NCBI RefSeq assembly: GCF_006345805.1 | Contig: NC_043010.1 | Location: 11,470,001-11,534,000, forward strand | From: Octopus sinensis | Taxonomy: Eukaryota | DNA: 64,000 nucleotides | Direction of reading: 5' to 3' | Notes under the pieces: model-generated | Seen by the model: the letters and a program-made list of their open reading frames with translations, nothing else | The model's database searches: none | Told to the model about the DNA's origin: nothing | Shown here: positions 265-50,277 of the stretch, piece after piece | Layout: each line of letters begins with the position of its first letter | Numbering within the stretch: position 1 is the first letter of the stretch | Position numbers and translations under genes: made by a program

Positions 265-2727
265 TCAAAAATGAAACCTCAAAATACTTAATATTAAAAT
301 ATGGTTAATTGATAAAAATAAGTTGTCAAAATTTACCTGTGCAGCTCTTGGCAAGCTTCTTGTTGCATTTAAATTATTCCATTCAACAGGCAACTCATCT
401 TCCTGGTAGAGCTGTGTTTTTGACATCATTGACGCATTTGTACTGTTTCTTGTCTCGTCAGAATTTAACGTCAGCGCCGTCAAATTATTAGCATGTGAAA
501 TAAGATGTCCTTTTTCACTCCTTGATTGGTTTGGTGAGCTTGTTTCAGTTATATGTTGAGTATTCCTCACATTGTGACATCGAACGATACAAATAATGAT
601 TGACACAACAACAGCCACTGACACAATCACAGCTGCCAGTGTTATGACTATAACTAAATTAAGATGTATCCTGTTGTCTGCTTGTGTATTCACTGCAGTG
701 AACATTTTGGACGTTTTATTACTAACCGTCAATGTCAAGGATAGTGCTGTAGACGTTGACAGAACTGGAGTACCGCTATCTTTGACAATCAACTGGAGGT
801 TGTATAACCCAGCATCATTTTGGTAAACTGTGCGAGAGAAAGACATGGCTCCAGTGTAAGGGTTGACTGTAAACAGTTGTCGGTCATTTCCCCCAAGTAT
901 TTCATATCGGAGGAAAGCGTTTTCTCGGCTGTCTCTATCTGAAGCTCTTAATGTTGTGATATCATTTTCACTTTGAGGGTGATAGTAGACATCCAAACTG
1001 AAGGGGTTAACACTAGGAAAAGTGAAATACGGAGCATTGTCATTCTCGTCCATAACTTCAACAATAACATTTGCTGTATTGTTTAACTGAGGATCTCCGT
1101 TGTCTTTTACTAGGACTTGGAATTTATAGTTGTTATTCTGTTCATAGTCCAAAGACTCAATGGTTGAAATAAAACCATAATTTGTAATCTGAAATGGAAT
1201 TTTATCTTTGTTTTCACTAACTAAATGATACGATAATTTACCCCCTGAATCTAAGTCAGGGTCAGTAGCATTGATGAAGCCGACGGGAAAATTTAGTTCT
1301 TCATTTTCATAAGTCAAAAATTTAAATGTTTTTTTGGTAAATTGTGGTTGCACATCATTTACATCCATTACTTGAATTGAGAATTGTCGCTGAGCTTTCA
1401 AAGGTGGTTGGCCCATATCTTCACATGTAATTTTTATATCATAATGATCCTCAGCCTCTCGATTAACAAGGCTTTTCAATATTACTTTGTATTCCTTCGA
1501 TGCTAGACTTCGAAGCTGAAATTTTTCATGGTGAAGATCACAAGAGACTTCTCCATTTTGTCCAAAGTCATTATCTATGATTTTCACGAATGCAATGAAA
1601 CTTCCAACTTTAATCTTTTCTGAAATTGTAGCAGTATTGTCTACTAATGCCGACACAAAATTTATATCTATCTCCGGTGCATTATTTTGTTGGTTGATCA
1701 CATTAACAAAAACCAAAGCAATGGCACTGAGAGGAGGTCGGCCTCCGTCCCTTGCTTCCACAAACAATTTGTAGTTTTTCTTTTGCCCGGCAGGCAACTT
1801 TTTCCACAAGTATATTCTACCATCATCTTTATTTAGTTGAAAATATAACCTGGCAACATCGCTTATTTTGGAACTAAAATAATAGGAAACTTTACTGTTT
1901 TTCCCAGAATCCAAATCTGTTGCTGACAAAGTTAGCACAGGAACATTCATTTGGTGTGTGTTTTTTATAGAAATGTTATAAATGCTTTGAGGAAAAACTG
2001 GCCGATTGTCATTTACGTCATTAACTGCTATGTGGACTTTCAAAATGCTTTTTCTTGAAGGGAAGCCTCCATCTTTAGCAACAACCTGCAGCATGTAAGA
2101 GTCTTTAGCTTCTCTATCAAGTCTTTCTTTTAAAACAATCTCAAGTGTTGCTGTGCCATCCACTCTTTTGGAAACGGATAAGGTAAAAGGCTCATCCAAA
2201 CTGTCTTCTAATTGATATGTTATCTGAGAATTAAAGAGTCCAACATCTTTGTCAATAGCGTTGGGAATCAAGCTTGAAGTTCCTTTTCCATCAGACTCAG
2301 AAAATTCTAGACTGATTTGTTCCTGAGGAAATTCTGGAGAATGATCGTTTATGTCTTCTACTAAAATCTTTACTTTGAGTATCTTTATAAATGTTTCCTC
2401 TTGTCTTACTGCAATGTCAACCATTTTAAAACATTCTGTATTATATGTACAAAGGTTTTCTGCATCCAATGACTGGGCTGTGTATAGCTTTCCGGTTTTG
2501 GTAACATTGAACAACTGCAGAGTCTTGAGAGACCCACCTTGCAGCTGACTAAAAGTCACTTGGTCTTGGACTTGAACTGGTATTCTATCTAACAAGTGAG
2601 AATCTTTGGCTATGTCTCCTAAATATGTTCTGGCATTCTTGCTTTCTTCTACTCTGTACATAAGATCCACACAAAAAGAGGAGGGCAAGACAAAAAACAA
2701 TATGAAAAATGAAAGCAGCATATCCAT
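265..2727 (-). CDS. Protocadherin (cephalopod expanded type): large exon encoding signal peptide, EC1-EC6, TM and proximal cytoplasmic tail. Probably spliced at 337 to exons left of the window; read-through gives 820 aa.
   Basis: 820-aa ORF with hydrophobic N-terminus and six cadherin repeats (DINDHSP, LDRE, DVNDNRP, DVNDVQP, LDYE, DENDNAP, DxD motifs). EC1 has C-X5-C (CTYNTEC). TM segment is LVIVITLAAVIVSVAVVVSIIICIV. No specific orthologue can be named. Confidence 0.97.
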   Translation of the reverse strand: MDMLLSFFILFFVLPSSFCVDLMYRVEESKNARTYLGDIAKDSHLLDRIPVQVQDQVTFSQLQGGSLKTLQLFNVTKTGKLYTAQSLDAENLCTYNTECFKMVDIAVRQEETFIKILKVKILVEDINDHSPEFPQEQISLEFSESDGKGTSSLIPNAIDKDVGLFNSQITYQLEDSLDEPFTLSVSKRVDGTATLEIVLKERLDREAKDSYMLQVVAKDGGFPSRKSILKVHIAVNDVNDNRPVFPQSIYNISIKNTHQMNVPVLTLSATDLDSGKNSKVSYYFSSKISDVARLYFQLNKDDGRIYLWKKLPAGQKKNYKLFVEARDGGRPPLSAIALVFVNVINQQNNAPEIDINFVSALVDNTATISEKIKVGSFIAFVKIIDNDFGQNGEVSCDLHHEKFQLRSLASKEYKVILKSLVNREAEDHYDIKITCEDMGQPPLKAQRQFSIQVMDVNDVQPQFTKKTFKFLTYENEELNFPVGFINATDPDLDSGGKLSYHLVSENKDKIPFQITNYGFISTIESLDYEQNNNYKFQVLVKDNGDPQLNNTANVIVEVMDENDNAPYFTFPSVNPFSLDVYYHPQSENDITTLRASDRDSRENAFLRYEILGGNDRQLFTVNPYTGAMSFSRTVYQNDAGLYNLQLIVKDSGTPVLSTSTALSLTLTVSNKTSKMFTAVNTQADNRIHLNLVIVITLAAVIVSVAVVVSIIICIVRCHNVRNTQHITETSSPNQSRSEKGHLISHANNLTALTLNSDETRNSTNASMMSKTQLYQEDELPVEWNNLNATRSLPRAAQVNFDNLFLSINHILILSILRFHF
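331..340 (-). other. 5' splice donor ending the large protocadherin exon (CAG|GTAAAT, exon ends at 337, phase 0 after Q797)
   Basis: Minus strand reads gcacag|gtaaattt. 2727-337+1 = 2391 nt = 797 whole codons. The remaining 23 ORF codons lie in AT-rich intron-like sequence. Confidence 0.8.
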
Positions 2728-7534: not shown

Positions 7535-7770
7535 GTTGTTGTTTTACATCCACTTCCCATTGTGGCAGGGCTAGGATAGGACAGCTCAGATCAGGTCATT
7601 TCATTCTGAGTCAAATTGTTATTCGCAGTTACTGCTCTCCGAAAAAAAGTCAGAGGACTGAATCTCACTCTCATGTTTCAGTTTTGACTAGGTTTCTATG
7701 TCAGCAAGTCTTTCTTAACACCATCTGTTTTACAGGAAGTACCAAGTGCCTTTTTTTTATATATTATGGA

Positions 7771-8134
7771 ACCAGCCCACATGGTTCTGGGTTCAGTCCC
7801 ACTGCGTGGCACCTTGGGCAAGTGTCTTCTACTATAGCTCCGGGCCGACCAAAGCCTTGTGAGTGGATTTGGTAGACGGAAACTGAAAAGAAGCCCGTCG
7901 TATATATGTATATATATATATGCGTGTGTGTGTTTGTGTGTCTGTGTTTGTCCCCCTAGCATTGCTTGACAACCGATGCTGGTGTGTTTATGTCCCCGTT
8001 ACTTAGCAGTTCGGCAAAAGAGACCGATAGAATAAGTACTGGGCTTACAAAAGAATAAGTCCCAGGGTCGAGTTGCTCGATTAAAGGCGGTGCTCCAGCA
8101 TGGCTGCAGTCAAATGACTGAAACAAGTAAAGAG
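7771..8134 (+). mobile_element. SINE family C (tRNA-like head, central (TA)/(TG) microsatellite, (TAAAAGAG)n tail), slightly 5'-truncated
   Basis: gggttcagtcccactgcgtggcaccttgggcaagtgtc... through ...gactgaaacaagtaa. The ccttgggcaag segment resembles the CORE-SINE core (inference). Confidence 0.9.
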
Positions 8135-25150: not shown

Positions 25151-25429
25151 AACTGAGACATTCAGTAACAGTTCTTTAAAGTAAAGGCTATTTGCCAACA
25201 CAATGTCCTGGAAAGGACAAATGCTACTGTTGTTTAACCCCAGGAAACATCATTTCCAGCTGGCTATATGACACAATATCTGTGTCCTTATATTTTCAAA
25301 GAGGGAATCCAGTACTCCCATCCAACATAAGACAACATCTGTGGACTGATTTCTAGATTATTACTCTTTATCAACAGAGCAGCTGCTTGGCTAGGTGGCA
25401 CTGCTGAATTCCCCATTTGAAAATACGTA

Positions 25430-25855
25430 GGCGCAGGAGTGGCTGTGTGGTAAGTAGCTTGTTTACCAACCACATGGTTCTGAGTTCAGTCCCACTGCAT
25501 GGCACCTTGGGCAAGTGTCTTCTACTTTAGCCTCGGGCTGACCAAAGCCTTGTGAGTGGATTTGGTAGACGGAAACTGAAAAGAAGCCCGTCGTATATAT
25601 GTATATATATATATATATATATATGCGTGTGTGTGTTTGTGTGTCTGTGTTTGTCCCCCTAGCATTGTTTGACAACCGATGCTGGTGTGTTTATATCCCC
25701 ATTACTTAGCGGTTCGGCAAAAGAGACCAATAGAATAAGTACTGGGCTTACAAAAGAATAAGTCCCAGGGTCGAGTTGCTCGATTAAAGGCGGTGCTCCA
25801 GCATGGCTGCAGTCAAATGACTGAAACAAGTAAAAGAGTAAAAGAGTAAAGAGAG
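25430..25855 (+). mobile_element. SINE family C, full length
   Basis: ggcgcaggagtggctgtgtggtaag... through ...taaaagagtaaaagag. Confidence 0.92.
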
Positions 25856-33215: not shown

Positions 33216-33449
33216 TAATGTATATAAAAACAAAATATCAAGGATAGTCATAGCTGGTATAGTGTTGAGCATGGATTTACTTAGTCAAGGCTAACCCATG
33301 GTTAAATAGAAACAACAAATAATATACCCTACTAAAATAATGCGACAGGGGTATGCTATGTAACATGGCTGTATATCATAACAAGTATGTGTAACACATA
33401 TGTAGAAATAAGTGATAGATGGATGCAACAGATGTTTAAGAAAGGATAC

Positions 33450-33865
33450 AGTTGGCTGTGTGGTAAGTAGCTTGCTTACCCACCACATGGTTCCGGGTTC
33501 AGTCCCACTGCGTGGCACCTTGGGCAAGTGTCTTCTACTATAGCCTTGGGCCGACCAGAGCCTTGTGAGTGGATTTGGTAGATGGAAACTGAAAGAAGCC
33601 CGTCGTATATATGTATGTATATATGTGTATGTATATGTGAGTGTATGTTTGTGTGTCTGTGTTTGTCCGACCAACATCGCTTAACAACCGATGCTGGTGT
33701 GTTTACGACCCAGTAACTTAGCGGTTCGGTAAAAGTGACCGATAGAATAAGTACTGGGCTTACAAAGAATAAGTGTTGGGGTCGATTTGATCGACTAAAG
33801 GTGGTGCTCCAGCATGGCCACAGTCAAATGACTGAAACAAGTAAACGAGTAAACGAGTAAACGAG
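33450..33865 (+). mobile_element. SINE family C
   Basis: Near full length; tail is (taaacgag)n. Confidence 0.9.
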
Positions 33866-36425: not shown

Positions 36426-37699
36426 ATATAAATACATATATTTCTTGTAAAAGCAACAAGAATCAGCTAACTTTGTTGCCGTTAATACTATGATATTTAT
36501 GATATAATTTGAAGTTAGACATAATGAGATGCGCTTAGCTAAGAAACATTCCTACAAAAATGGTAAAGAATTAATAATACAGAAAATGAAATACATACAG
36601 TGAGAAGACGAAGATGCAGATAGGCAGATGTTCTAAGGAGAAGCCTTTACAGTAGCTTAAAAAACTTCTCTCTGCATATTACATTCTTTTGAAGGCTGAA
36701 ATTATGAAAGATTTTACTAGAAAAATTGGAAATGTAACAACTAAGTTACTAAGAGCATCTGACAAATAGATATAAGACTAATTTGAAGCTGGCTTGGGAT
36801 TTATCACCCTACTATGTTGAGTATCCAAATATGAGGAGAAGGCAGCTTGTTCAGATTATTAACTCCAGTGTAATCTATGTAAAAGAGTTCACAATGGTCA
36901 TTTCTATACTACCGCTTATCAAAAGTGTTATTGATAATATGTAAGGAAAAGTGCAAAAGTGCGATGCATTCACCGTGATTTTTTAAAACTTAGAAATGGA
37001 TTTGGTTGCGTAAGACTTGTATTTAGTTTTAGTTGTAGCAGACCACTTGAAGACATTGTAGGAGATGAAAGGTAATGATTTCTTCAGCCGTCAAAAAGGA
37101 TGTTGCAATAAAGGGTAAGAAAGCAACATATTTATACTGTGACTGTATAAATACCAGGAGCGAGATTTTTTCTTCATGTCTACATGTTATAAAATATATC
37201 CTAGCAGAAATATGATGTGAAAAGGATTTTTTTTTTCTGGGTGATGGTCATGAAGTTTACATGACGCTCTGTATTTATCCACACAAAGCAAGTGATTTAA
37301 GACCTTGGTCGTAATGGGAACTACATCAAGAAGTATGTTGCTTCGGTTTAATAACATTGGCCATTATGAAAGCTAGATCAAGAAGTGTGTTGTTCTATTT
37401 TAATAACTAAGTCCATGGATTTTGAAATGAATAGCTGAAGTAGAACAAAATGGTTTGTCAAGTGTGATTTATTCTACTGAGAGTGAAGTTTAGGACAAGA
37501 CGGAGGGCTAATGTTGAGGCCTTGCAGTAGTTATGACAATAAGAATCATATTTTTTATTTATTTTAATTTTCATGGCTTAATCAGAGGAGAAATGGCATT
37601 GTTCTCAACCTTTTTGAGAACCTCCAAGACTATAAGAAGAAAAAATTAAGCTATCCTCAGACCAAAAGAAAAGATGATAGGTGAATGTTTGACAAATTG

Positions 37700-38710: not shown

Positions 38711-39767
38711 TAAAAATTCTAAATTAAAACCTTACATGGAATTTCATAGTAATTCATATTTCAAATAACTGATTGATAATTACAAAGTTGTCTCATTAAA
38801 CTCTTCCTTATAGAAGCAAAGGTAATTGAAGCAAAAGCGATTTGTTTCAATAGAAAGAGATGACAAAAAGAAGCTAAGGTTATGTTTGAACTGATGTTAA
38901 CTTAAAAATTGAGTTTAATGTTAAATTTAGTCTTAAAGTCACAATTAGTTTGTTTAGTCTTGTATAATGCAATTGTTGTATGGAGGGTTTTACTTCTCTG
39001 GTTTCCAGTATTTCACTTTATATTTAAAACTGTAGTTAATTGGAGGTTATCAGGCATAATAAAATGAACAAAAAATGTTTCAATCAGTTAAAATTGCACC
39101 TATATTAGAGAGAAACATCATCGACTATATTAATAATTCTTGTAAAGAAAAACAAGGGAGATGACTTTGAAATGGAAACTGACCAAAAGTTGAATGAGGA
39201 CATGCAGTGATGAGGGTAGATGGGCTTGATTTTTAGCGAGTGCAGGGACAATTTCAGGCATGTTTCAATTTTATTACACCTTTTCAATGAAGTATAGACT
39301 TAATTGTGTTTATTTGATCTGAGAATGGCTATGGAAATATACAGATTTTAATGAGAAAAACTATAGAGATTTAAGGAATATATAGATTTTAGTGGCAGTA
39401 ATGACATGAGAAAATTTCTCGGTGATCTTTGCAGGAAGAACGTATAATTTAGTGAGTAGGTGGGGGATGGAAGCTTACAATTAGAGTTAAATATTCCTTA
39501 TGGACTCATATCACCCTTATTTTTATGCTATTTGTTTCTACTCTGTGTACTAACCTTGGCAATATCTAACTTCTCTTAGTGTTATTTCTAAATCTGGAGT
39601 TGTATGTATTGTCCTATGAAGTTAACATGCCTACATTTTCTACAATATATGTATAAGCATATTATTTACAATATCATTTATGAAATGTGGCCAAACACAG
39701 TATGGAATTCATAATGTATGTTTGACCACAGTTTCATATGTTTCAAGATAGCAACCAAAAGTCTTAC

Positions 39768-39921
39768 CTGGAATTTCTTCATAGAGTCCATTTTCCCCTT
39801 TAATCCAACCATGTCGATTGTTTTTATAGGAAGTTTCTAATCCACTATTTTGGTCGAGTGTCATAAATGTACCTTCTTCCACTCCACCTTTCCCCGATGT
39901 AAGGTTGCAGGCCTCATACAA
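39768..39921 (-). other. Putative protocadherin cytoplasmic-tail exon (51 codons + 1 nt) of a neighbouring gene; acceptor is non-canonical, possibly a pseudo-exon
   Basis: Stop-free frame LYEACNLTSGKGGVEEGTFMTLDQNSGLETSYKNNRHGWIKGENGLYEEIP ends at a strong donor CCAG|GTAAGA and follows a pyrimidine tract catcttctgtttttcg|. It resembles, from memory, the GHGW..G..GHYEELPG tail motif of octopus protocadherins (not verified). Confidence 0.65.
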
Positions 39922-40132
39922 CGAAAAACAGAAGATGCTATTTTATTTCAGTCGATTTGAAAATTATATGTTAAATAGGTAGTTGGGGTGGGGGAAGAAA
40001 TTACTTGAAGAGAAATTCAAGGAAATTTATTGTAAAAATGAATTTCTTCTCAAAAAATATATATCATTAAACATACTATACACCAATAATCATATTTAAA
40101 CAGTTTTTAATATTATTACTATTTATAAAGGT

Positions 40133-49290: not shown

Positions 49291-49697
49291 ACTCTTTTAC
49301 TCTTTTACTTGTTTCAGTCATTTGACTGCGGCCATGCTGGAGCACCGCCTTTTAGTCGAGCAAATCGACCCCGGGACTTATTCTTTGTAAGCCTAGTACT
49401 TATTCTATCGGTCTCTTTTGCTGAACCGCTAAGTGAAGGGGACGTAAACACACCAGCATTGGTTGTCAAGCAATGCTAGGGAGACAAACACAGACACACA
49501 AACACACACACATACATATATGTATACATATATACGACAGGCTTCTTTCAGTTTCCATCTACCAAATCCACTCACAAGGCTTTGGTCGGCCCGAGGCTAT
49601 AGTAGAAGACACTTGCCCAAAGTGCCACGCAGTGGGACTGAACCCGGAACCATGTGGTTGGTAAGCAAGCTACTTACCACACAGCCACTCCTGCGCC
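49291..49697 (-). mobile_element. SINE family C, full length
   Basis: Reverse complement of the family consensus seen in this window. Confidence 0.92.
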
Positions 49698-50277
49698 TAT
49701 ATATTTATATTTATATTTTTTCTCTGTTAAGTCACACGTATTTGTCTCTTCTCTGCTGCAAACCTTACTGGTCAAAGAATCTTGTCATCTGTGTTTGCTC
49801 AAAGCAGCGCTTCTATCCATGAGACCTAGCTTCTTTTCTTCCTTCATTTGACAAAATGTGCATGTGCTGTTGTTGTTGTTGTTGTTGTCATCGTCATTGA
49901 TGATGTTGTTGTTACATTTGTTCATGTCATGCAAATGTACATTTTCAGCGATCAAAAAGCGAATGTCCTTGCTTCCAAGTTTTCGTGTTTGTTTCATTGA
50001 GTATTATAATTCTGCTTAGCAAGCATTCCAAAGAAAAATTCATTTGATAATGCTATAAATATGGTCTGGCTTCAGACCAAAATAAACACACGTGTGTACG
50101 TTTTGAGAACTGACAATGCTAACAACAACAGCATTGATGATGATGGTGGTGGTGGTGGTGGTGGTAATAATGATGATGATGATGATGATGATAGAGACCC
50201 TGTGAGACCTTTGACAACACAGGCTGCTGTCTGCTCTTACAGAATTAGCCAGAACAAGGTTGGAGAAGTAAAAATGG

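What the first reader, a model, noticed from the sequence alone, without database searches (positions are those of the whole stretch)
39768..39940. Orphan protocadherin tail exon with a broken acceptor and an in-frame rescue site
Seen: a 154-nt stop-free minus-strand segment ending ...HGWIKGENGLYEEIP at a strong donor CAG|GTAAGA (phase 1). It is preceded by a pyrimidine tract that ends in CG rather than AG (39923-39922). Starting there gives phase 0, matching the phase-0 donor type seen at the end of the large exon (337). The next AG (GAG|GCC, 39913-39914) lies exactly 9 nt downstream and would keep the frame, losing only LYE. Recalled, unverified: octopus protocadherin tails carry a similar GHGW..G..GHYEELPG exon. 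Established: YEEI is the optimal Src SH2-binding phosphomotif. Inference: this exon lies upstream of the 2727 gene, so it belongs to the preceding cluster member (ectodomain exon beyond 64000, or lost). One base may therefore switch that gene between tailed, tail-skipped and LYE-deleted isoforms.
Basis: partly seen in the sequence, partly recalled or inferred. Interest (0 to 1): 0.75.

Follow-up and report, generated by a model that had tools for sequence, protein, structure and literature searches.

The report
Annotated octopus protocadherin tail exon
This is an ordinary, intact and already annotated small exon that encodes the cytoplasmic tail of an Octopus sinensis protocadherin; the "broken" splice site is just part of the pyrimidine tract in front of the real, conserved splice site.

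Summary

The window is Octopus sinensis CM016872.1, about 11,470,001-11,534,000. The segment is the penultimate coding exon of the RefSeq gene "protocadherin beta-2" (XP_029645234.1 and XP_036364519.1). That gene's 2.4-kb ectodomain exon lies 72.5 kb upstream, about 48 kb beyond the right end of the window.

- It is used by the O. sinensis X2 and O. vulgaris models.
- It is identical in O. bimaculoides and in a third Octopus species.
- It sits at the homologous base in Argonauta hians.

The "broken" CG (39923-39922) is TG in all three other species. It is a T>C change inside the polypyrimidine tract and shows no sign of ever having been AG.

The exon is 145 nt (39912-39768) and enters in phase 0 and leaves in phase 1. 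It is single copy and under purifying selection (dN/dS about 0.18 against Argonauta).

It belongs to a cephalopod-restricted tail module (VTSG...PD...GHGW...G.YE[ET][IL]P). About half of the sampled octopod protocadherins carry this module.

One oddity remains. Isoform X1 adds "YE", which implies a non-canonical TG acceptor 6 nt upstream. I could not obtain any RNA evidence for it.

The parts
39768..39912 (-). Tail exon, 145 nt, entering in phase 0 and leaving in phase 1. It encodes ACNLTSGKGGVEEGTFMTLDQNSGLETSYKNNRHGWIKGENGLYEEIP plus the first base of the next codon. It is the penultimate coding exon of O. sinensis 'protocadherin beta-2' isoform X2.
   Evidence: XP_029645234.1 (P0124) reads ...LPSSQ|ACNL...YEEIP|AFKRM, and O. 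vulgaris CAI9732493.1 has the same junction. tblastn maps the exon here. The encoded peptide is identical in O. bimaculoides and 36/48 identical in Argonauta, with dN/dS 0.18. Nucleotide identity to O. bimaculoides is 99.3% in the exon and 67-97% in the flanking 250-nt bins.
39913..39914 (-). Canonical AG of the 3' splice site (TATGAG|GCC). The G at position -3 makes it a weak-looking acceptor.
   Evidence: The AG is identical in O. bimaculoides and in the Logan species. In Argonauta hians it is AAAAG|CCG at the homologous column, and the Argonauta model starts its exon exactly there.
39913..39918 (-). The six bases TATGAG, included only in isoform X1 (adds Tyr-Glu). This implies a non-canonical TG acceptor at 39920-39919.
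   Evidence: XP_036364519.1 (P0027) reads ...LPSSQ|YEACNL. The big exon ends CAG|GTAAGT in phase 0, so the intron must end ...CGTTG. No RNA evidence could be obtained.
39920..39937 (-). Polypyrimidine tract CATCTTCTGTTTTTCGTT.
   Evidence: The orthologous sequence is TTTTTTGTT in O. bimaculoides, in the Logan species and in Argonauta. C39923 is therefore a lineage-specific T>C pyrimidine change.
39761..39767 (-). 5' splice site GTAAGAC following CAG.
   Evidence: Read directly. CCAG|GTAAG is conserved in all four species. The exon is joined to the AFKRM exon in the RefSeq models.
36679..36695 (-). Last coding exon of the same gene: (G)CC TTC AAA AGA ATG TAA, giving A-F-K-R-M-stop, behind the acceptor TTTCAG. 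The preceding intron is 3,072 nt.
   Evidence: The annotated gene end at L005 88131 corresponds to window 36679. The sequence is identical in O. bimaculoides.
337..2727 (-). Context only. This is the large first coding exon (signal peptide, six cadherin repeats, transmembrane segment, proximal cytoplasmic part) of the next cluster member. Its own tail exons lie left of the window.
   Evidence: Pfam Cadherin E=5.9e-68. It is 98.6% identical to O. bimaculoides XP_014784415.1. The donor is CAG|GTAAAT at 337.

Best explanation
The segment is a functional, conserved and already annotated coding exon. It is the penultimate exon of an Octopus sinensis clustered protocadherin gene (RefSeq 'protocadherin beta-2').

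Transcription starts about 75 kb upstream, outside the window, at a 2,433-nt exon. That exon encodes the whole ectodomain, the transmembrane helix and the proximal cytoplasmic region, and it ends CAG|GT in phase 0. A 72.5-kb intron is then removed using the AG at 39914-39913.

The 145-nt exon adds 48 residues of a cephalopod-specific tail module ending in G-L-Y-E-E-I-P. It is then joined in phase 1 to a tiny last exon (AFKRM-stop) 3 kb downstream.

The acceptor looks weak (G at -3) and the exon length is 3n+1. Inclusion therefore appears to be regulated:
- Skipping shifts the frame of the last exon and gives a different C-terminus.
- An alternative terminal exon in the long intron gives a third ending.

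What the tail does is inferred, not shown. The invariant Tyr-Glu-x-Ile/Leu most likely acts as a tyrosine-based signal. It could be a phosphotyrosine docking site for a Src-family SH2 domain, or a YxxPhi sorting signal.
For: Shown:
- Window 26679-64000 is 100% identical to GCA_006345805.1 CM016872.1 within the locus of XP_036364519.1.
- The RefSeq O. sinensis X1 and X2 models and an O. vulgaris model all contain the exon. X2 and the O. vulgaris model start it at the AG.
- The big exon ends CAG|GTAAGT in phase 0.
- The acceptor AG, the donor and the 3n+1 length are conserved in O. bimaculoides, in a third Octopus species and in Argonauta hians (145, 145, 145 and 166 nt). All indels are multiples of three.
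- dN 0.12, dS 0.66. Conservation peaks on the exon.
- It is single copy in the window and in the 98-kb locus.
- Homologous tails occur in 66 of 135 sampled octopod protocadherins, with Tyr and the following Glu invariant.
- A profile search of 1.84 billion representative proteins returned 33 hits, and every named one is cephalopod.
- Tail-skipped, frame-shifted isoforms are annotated for this gene in O. bimaculoides and for the neighbouring gene.

From the literature:
- pYEEIP is the core of the standard Fyn SH2 ligand peptide (10.1101/2020.10.30.361790).
Against: - No transcript or junction reads could be inspected. Exon use rests on gene models and on conservation.
- The O. bimaculoides RefSeq isoforms found here (P0127, P0123) do not include the exon although it is intact there. 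Inclusion may therefore be low or tissue-restricted.
- GAG|G is an unusual acceptor.
- Isoform X1 needs a non-AG acceptor. That may be a modelling artefact.
- Nothing here tests phosphorylation, SH2 binding or sorting.
Confidence: 0.92

Rival explanations
1. The exon originally began at 39921 behind an AG that has mutated to CG. The exon is now orphaned or dependent on a downstream rescue AG, and a single base decides between tailed, skipped and LYE-deleted forms.
For: - The CG does sit at the end of a T-run.
- L-Y-E loosely resembles the x-Y-I start of some paralogous tail exons.
Against: - The position is TG in O. bimaculoides, in the Logan species and in Argonauta, so there is no sign of an ancestral AG.
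- The Argonauta model and two Octopus models start the exon at the AG homologous to 39914-39913.
- Argonauta keeps the paralogue-like length after that AG, while Octopus has a 12-nt in-frame deletion. This explains why the exon start looks short.
- Some paralogues also begin with A-C right after the junction, as this exon does.
- No annotated protein contains L-Y-E-A-C.
Confidence: 0.02
2. The Tyr-Glu insertion of isoform X1 reflects real use of a non-canonical TG 3' splice site (TTG|TATGAG) in tandem with the weak AG 6 nt downstream. This would be like the TG-AG tandem acceptors described in human genes.
For: - XP_036364519.1 can only be derived from this genome with an intron ending in TG.
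- In human genes, TG acceptors occur only as alternatives to a nearby AG acceptor that scores lower than usual, within 28 nt (PMC2374985). This site fits that pattern.
- The TTG and the intron flank are identical in three Octopus species.
- The neighbouring gene has a tandem acceptor at the same junction, giving one Gln more or less.
Against: - There is no RNA evidence, only one computed gene model.
- According to that paper only about 0.01% of candidate TG motifs are used (PMC2374985).
- In Argonauta the six bases read TAAAAG, which would insert a stop codon, so the variant is not ancient.
- The O. vulgaris model uses the AG only.
Confidence: 0.35
3. The exon is a decaying or rarely used pseudo-exon that gene predictors include only because it resembles paralogous tails.
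For: - The O. bimaculoides RefSeq isoforms for the orthologous gene skip it.
- The acceptor looks weak (GAG|G).
Against: - The frame, both splice sites and the 3n+1 length have been kept between Octopus and Argonauta, with dN/dS 0.18.
- The exon is the local conservation peak.
- It is included in three independent annotations: O. sinensis RefSeq, the O. vulgaris annotation and the A. hians annotation.
Confidence: 0.04
4. The segment is part of a transposon or other repeat.
For: The window is rich in repeats.
Against: - The exon has a single copy in the window and in the 98-kb locus. The next-best matches are 11-22 nt chance hits.
- It is syntenic in three other cephalopod genomes.
Confidence: 0.01

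Closest known systems
RefSeq models XP_029645234.1 (X2) and XP_036364519.1 (X1), Octopus sinensis 'protocadherin beta-2'; O. vulgaris CAI9732493.1
   Same: These are the same exon on the same genome sequence. The encoded 48 (X2) or 50 (X1) residues are 100% identical.
   Different: Nothing differs. The finding is this annotated exon.
Tail exons of paralogous octopod clustered protocadherins, for example the neighbouring gene (O. bimaculoides XP_014784415.1: ...MYIPQAAVTSGGRGFEENTFMSPD...GHCWTERDFGQYEEIP)
   Same: - The position in the gene is the same, directly after the phase-0 donor of the big exon.
- It leaves in phase 1 into a short last exon.
- The motif order is the same: TSG, E-rich patch, PD, H-x-W, G-x-YEE-I/L-P.
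- It is 38-44% identical to the closest paralogous tails listed.
   Different: - This orthologue group in Octopus has a 12-nt deletion near the exon start.
- It has QNSG in place of the usual PD...S stretch.
Constant-region exons of vertebrate clustered protocadherins (alpha and gamma)
   Same: A large 'variable' exon encodes the ectodomain, the transmembrane segment and the proximal tail. Small downstream exons complete the cytoplasmic domain. A link between the protocadherin-alpha tail and the Src-family kinase Fyn is reported (cited in PMC6339937).
   Different: - In the loci read here each octopus gene has its own tail exons, and the sequences differ between neighbouring genes.
- There is no sequence similarity to vertebrate tails. 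Published searches found no vertebrate cytoplasmic motifs in octopus protocadherins (PMC6339937).
- The 51-residue peptide matches no Pfam family.
TG-AG tandem 3' splice sites (Szafranski et al. 2007, PMC2374985) and NAGNAG tandem acceptors
   Same: There is an in-frame alternative acceptor a few bases from a weak AG. It produces a 2-residue insertion or deletion in the protein.
   Different: Here it is supported only by a computed gene model. It is not conserved in Argonauta.
Src-family SH2 ligand motif pYEEI(P), and YxxPhi sorting signals
   Same: The exon ends in YEEIP. Paralogues keep Y-E-[ET]-[IL]. pYEEIP is the core of the standard Fyn SH2 ligand peptide. Both YEEI and YETL fit Y-x-x-hydrophobic (established knowledge).
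   Different: There is no evidence of phosphorylation or binding. A cuttlefish homologue has HREEMS at this place, so the tyrosine is not conserved in all cephalopods.

Membership tests
Cephalopod clustered-protocadherin cytoplasmic tail exon | Sequence homology to the tails of annotated protocadherins | tested here: met
   It is 100% identical over 50 residues to XP_036364519.1. It is 33-44% identical to the paralogous tails that align over about 45 residues. It aligns over its whole length in A2. The A2 profile retrieves cephalopod proteins only.
Cephalopod clustered-protocadherin cytoplasmic tail exon | Lies downstream of, and on the same strand as, a large cadherin-repeat exon that ends in a phase-0 donor | tested here: met
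   The big exon is at L005 10001-12433 and ends CAG|GTAAGT. The tail exon is 72.5 kb downstream on the same strand, and no other gene is called in between.
Cephalopod clustered-protocadherin cytoplasmic tail exon | Conserved C-terminal G-x-Y-E-[ET]-[IL]-[PAS] motif, followed by a phase-1 donor | tested here: met
   The exon ends GLYEEIP, then CAG|GTAAGA. Tyr and Glu are invariant in 33 aligned tails.
Functional spliced coding exon (U2-type, GT-AG) | AG acceptor behind a pyrimidine tract and a GT donor, both conserved in orthologues | tested here: met
   Four-species alignment.
Functional spliced coding exon (U2-type, GT-AG) | Reading frame kept and purifying selection | tested here: met
   Lengths are 145, 145, 145 and 166 nt (all 3n+1). 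dN/dS is 0.18.
Functional spliced coding exon (U2-type, GT-AG) | Spliced reads across both junctions | not testable with these tools
   The only related contigs found (L001-L004) are unspliced genomic sequence. A search with a junction-spanning peptide found nothing.
Exon with a mutated (AG>CG) ancestral acceptor | AG at the homologous position in related species or paralogues | tested here: not met
   The position is TG in O. bimaculoides, the Logan species and A. hians.
TG-AG tandem acceptor | A TG used as an alternative 3' splice site within 28 nt of an AG acceptor that scores lower than usual | tested here: inconclusive
   The geometry fits: the TG is 6 nt upstream of GAG|G. Isoform X1 requires it. 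No transcript evidence was available.
Src-family SH2 docking site | Tyr-Glu-Glu-Ile sequence | tested here: met
   YEEIP is read directly.
Src-family SH2 docking site | Tyrosine phosphorylated in vivo and bound by an SH2 domain | not testable with these tools
   This needs biochemistry.
Transposon fragment | Multiple dispersed copies | tested here: not met
   It is single copy in 64 kb plus 98 kb.

The most novel reading that the evidence does not exclude
The most novel reading the evidence still allows has two parts.

First, octopod protocadherin genes may carry a cephalopod-specific tyrosine-signalling tail exon (G-x-YEE-I/L-P) that is apparently undescribed. Its inclusion would be tuned by a deliberately weak acceptor. 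Because its length is 3n+1, skipping swaps the whole C-terminus by frameshift.

Second, at this particular gene the spliceosome may also use a non-canonical TG acceptor 6 nt upstream. That would be a TG-AG tandem in a mollusc.
Probability: 0.25. Interest if true: 0.4.

Novelty: already known. Interest (0 to 1): 0.12.

Why it matters
As a finding it changes little. The exon, its parent gene and its alternative forms are already in public annotation, and the proposed one-base splice switch does not exist.

Two points are useful to people working on cephalopod protocadherins:
- About half of the sampled family members share a conserved tail exon ending in a YEE-I/L-P motif. That motif is absent from the motif table of the one paper on these genes whose supplement I could read, and from every paper in the searchable library.
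- Inclusion, skipping with a frameshift, and tandem acceptors at this exon recur in neighbouring genes.

Together these give a concrete and testable handle on how these adhesion receptors might signal. It remains a lead, not a result.

Tried and rejected
- Word-index protein search with the 51-residue peptide. It found only an unspliced genomic ORF from another Octopus species. It missed the exact RefSeq match, which surfaced only through the search with the neighbouring 820-residue protein.
- A third word-index search with a 138-residue junction-spanning tail, meant to find transcript-derived fragments. It returned nothing, so no RNA evidence was obtained.
- Pfam scan of the peptide: no family.
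- Fetching the O. vulgaris locus and the neighbouring O. sinensis gene locus. These failed because the genes span more than 100 kb or because the exact isoform is not on record.
- Looking for the distal last exon (xWQHxAQ-stop) in the window: absent.
- Identifying the species behind the Logan runs SRR11869384, SRR11869390, SRR11869391 and SRR11869394 through the literature: no paper.
- tRNA and Rfam scans of the window: nothing.
- Transposon origin: rejected, because the exon is single copy.
- An ancestral acceptor at the CG: rejected by the ortholog alignment.
- Albertin et al. 2015 could not be read in the library.

Full report
**1. The observation**

Reading the minus strand confirms every sequence statement in the finding.
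- 39921-39768 is 154 nt and stop-free. It encodes LYEACNLTSGKGGVEEGTFMTLDQNSGLETSYKNNRHGWIKGENGLYEEIP.
- It ends at CAG|GTAAGA, with one base left over.
- The T-rich run before it ends in CG (39923-39922).
- GAG|GCC lies 9 nt further in (AG at 39914-39913).
- The neighbouring large ORF (2727-265) carries six cadherin repeats (Pfam Cadherin E=5.9e-68). It has a CAG|GTAAAT donor at 337.

An open stretch of this size is common in 64 kb of AT-rich DNA. The case rests on homology, not on the open frame.

**2. Where the window comes from, and whose exon this is**

The 820-residue ORF is 98.6% identical to O. bimaculoides XP_014784415.1.

A local BLASTP of the peptide against the 121 proteins retrieved so far gave a 100% match over 50 residues. 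The match is to the C-terminus of O. sinensis XP_036364519.1, "protocadherin beta-2 isoform X1" (P0027).

Fetching that gene's locus (L005, GCA_006345805.1 CM016872.1) showed that window 26679-64000 is 100% identical to it. The mapping is L005 = 124810 - window.

The gene has this structure:
- A first coding exon at L005 10001-12433, which is window-equivalent 112377-114809, about 48-51 kb beyond the right end of the window. It ends ...CCA TCT TCA CAG|GTAAGT in phase 0.
- The tail exon, 72.5 kb downstream.
- A last exon at window 36695-36679, reading TTTCAG|CC TTC AAA AGA ATG TAA.

No other gene is called in the 98-kb locus.

So the exon is not an orphan.

**3. The acceptor**

The cluster members give three endings for this gene.
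- X2 (XP_029645234.1) and O. vulgaris CAI9732493.1 read ...LPSSQ|ACNLTSG.... The exon starts at 39912, behind the AG at 39914-39913.
- X1 (XP_036364519.1) reads ...LPSSQ|YEACNL.... The exon starts at 39918.
- X3 reads ...LPSSQ|YGFKNQQYNHPAIVCERA. It comes from an alternative terminal exon in the long intron, at L005 40344 onwards, outside the window.

No model starts at 39921.

The ortholog alignment settles the question:

| Species | Sequence at the acceptor |
|---|---|
| O. sinensis | TTTTTCGTTGTATGAG\|GCC |
| O. bimaculoides (L006 70758-70902) | TTTTTTGTTGTATGAG\|GCC |
| Third Octopus species (Logan contigs L001-L004) | TTTTTTGTTGTATGAG\|GCC |
| Argonauta hians (L007 31141-31306) | TTTTTTGTTATAAAAG\|CCG |

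- The AG is at the same column in all four species, and the Argonauta model begins its exon exactly there.
It is therefore a pyrimidine-to-pyrimidine change inside the polypyrimidine tract, on the O. sinensis lineage.
- No species examined has AG at that position.

The resemblance of L-Y-E to the x-Y-I start of some paralogous exons is coincidental. After the shared AG, Argonauta keeps the paralogue-like length (P-C-S-F-P-P-P-P before SSG). Octopus has a 12-nt in-frame deletion there. Several paralogues also start A-C, as this exon does.

**4. Is the exon functional?**

- Its length is 145 nt in the three Octopus species and 166 nt in Argonauta. All are 3n+1, and every indel is a multiple of three.
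- 36 of 48 alignable residues are identical. dN is 0.12 and dS is 0.66, a ratio of 0.18.
- Between O. sinensis and O. bimaculoides the exon is 99.3% identical. The adjacent 250 nt on each side are 96.8% identical, and bins further out are 67-95%.
- The donor CCAG|GTAAG is conserved in all four species.
- The exon is single copy.

These are the marks of a coding exon under purifying selection.

**5. The family**

Of 135 full-length octopod protocadherins collected here, 66 end with a homologous module.

Aligned (A2), the consensus is xxxxxVTSG....(E-rich)...PD......T..S..D..H.W.E..T..YEELP. The Tyr and the following Glu are invariant, and the position two further on is always Ile or Leu.

A profile search over 1.84 billion representative proteins found only 33 hits at E<=0.001. 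Every hit that carries a name is from Octopus, Argonauta or the cuttlefish Acanthosepion pharaonis. The cuttlefish sequence has HREEMS in place of YEEIP.

The module matches no Pfam family. It does not appear in the motif table of the paper on O. vulgaris protocadherins, which lists ectodomain, transmembrane and PP1 motifs only (PMC6339937 supplement). No paper in the searchable library mentions YEEIP, YETLP or YEELP in this context.

**6. Alternative forms**

The neighbouring gene shows the same repertoire.
- Isoforms X1 and X2 differ by one Gln exactly at the junction between the big exon and the tail exon. This indicates a tandem acceptor.
- Isoform X3 ends ...AAQ|HIKELRPEHYQHQERDRTEHL. That is the last exon (AHKRTKTRTLSTSGKGQN) read one base out of frame, so the tail exon has been skipped.

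For the gene studied here, O. bimaculoides X1 (P0127) likewise joins the big exon directly to a distal last exon. It reads that exon as FGSILHNKSH.... With the tail exon included, the same exon would read VWQHPAQ-stop.

Skipping a 3n+1 exon therefore replaces the whole C-terminus. This is ordinary alternative splicing and recurs across genes. It is not a one-base switch.

The acceptor has G at -3 in Octopus and A in Argonauta. By the general YAG rule (established knowledge) that is weak, which fits regulated inclusion. This last step is inference.

**7. The one oddity**

Isoform X1's extra Tyr-Glu can only come from this genome if the intron ends ...CGTTG. That means a TG acceptor 6 nt upstream of the AG.

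In human genes, TG acceptors exist only as alternatives to a nearby AG acceptor that scores lower than usual, within 28 nt (PMC2374985). The geometry here fits.

However:
- Support is a single computed model.
- The O. vulgaris model uses only the AG.
- In Argonauta the six bases contain a stop codon.
- I could not obtain transcript evidence.

I give it about one chance in three.

**8. How it most likely works**

Shown: this is a conserved coding exon with canonical signals, in an annotated gene, belonging to a cephalopod-restricted tail module.

Inferred:
- Inclusion is regulated through a weak acceptor.
- Skipping changes the C-terminus by frameshift.
- The terminal Y-E-E-I-P is a tyrosine-based signal. 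It matches the core of the standard Fyn/Src SH2 phosphopeptide ligand, and a link between a vertebrate protocadherin tail and Fyn is on record (cited in PMC6339937).
- Both YEEI and the paralogues' YETL also fit the Y-x-x-hydrophobic endocytic signal. I cannot choose between these two readings here.

**9. Verdict**

The feature is already known in annotation. Interest is low. The only residual curiosities are the possible TG acceptor and the tail motif, which I found described in none of the papers I could search.

Noticed in passing
Window 337 (donor of the neighbouring gene); its tail exons lie left of the window: The neighbouring protocadherin has annotated isoforms that differ by one Gln at the junction between the big exon and the tail exon (AAQ|QMYIP versus AAQ|MYIP, a tandem acceptor). 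It also has a tail-skipped isoform whose last exon is read out of frame (HIKELRPEHYQHQERDRTEHL). Both are conserved between O. sinensis and O. bimaculoides.
   Followed up: partly
L006 100996 (O. bimaculoides); L007 61127 (A. hians); not found in the window: A distal alternative last exon (V/A-W-Q-H-P/R-A-Q-stop) lies about 30 kb downstream of the tail exon in both species, and an O. vulgaris model uses its counterpart (VRQHPAQ). No match to it is found anywhere in the window (0 hits with up to 3 mismatches). O. sinensis RefSeq instead uses the proximal AFKRM exon, which is also intact in O. bimaculoides.
   Followed up: partly
L006 70758-70902 (O. bimaculoides): The tail exon is intact in O. 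bimaculoides, with the same peptide, acceptor and donor. Neither O. bimaculoides RefSeq isoform of the orthologous gene found here includes it.
   Followed up: partly
Window 39938-39939 (minus strand, TAG|CATC): Another AG lies 25 nt upstream of the used acceptor, between a possible branch site (CTGAAAT, 39951-39945) and the pyrimidine tract. Using it with the phase-0 donor would run into a stop (HLLFFVV-stop). A TAG is also present just upstream of the pyrimidine tract in all three other species.
   Followed up: no
Window 7770-8134 and 25416-25850: These are copies of an interspersed repeat of about 360-430 bp. It has more than 15 copies, 87-96% identical, in the 98-kb O. sinensis locus.
   Followed up: no
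Window 33291-33677 (-) and 49463-49822 (+): Two ORFs on opposite strands share a nearly identical peptide of about 55 residues (ASFSFHLPNPLTRLWSA.GYSRRHLPKVPRSGTEPGTMW.VSKLLTTQP). They are probably inverted copies of a repeat element.
   Followed up: no
P0159 (Acanthosepion pharaonis); P0148, P0156 and P0160 (source unknown): Some homologous tails have His-Arg-Glu-Glu-Met, Ile-Asp-Glu-Met or Ala-Glu-Glu-Ile in place of Tyr-Glu-Glu-Ile. The signalling tyrosine may therefore be an octopod feature rather than a cephalopod-wide one.
   Followed up: no
Tool behaviour: The word-indexed protein search did not return RefSeq proteins that contain the query exactly. This happened for the 51-residue query and the 138-residue query. 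For short queries, 'no hit' from that tool is weak evidence of absence.
   Followed up: yes
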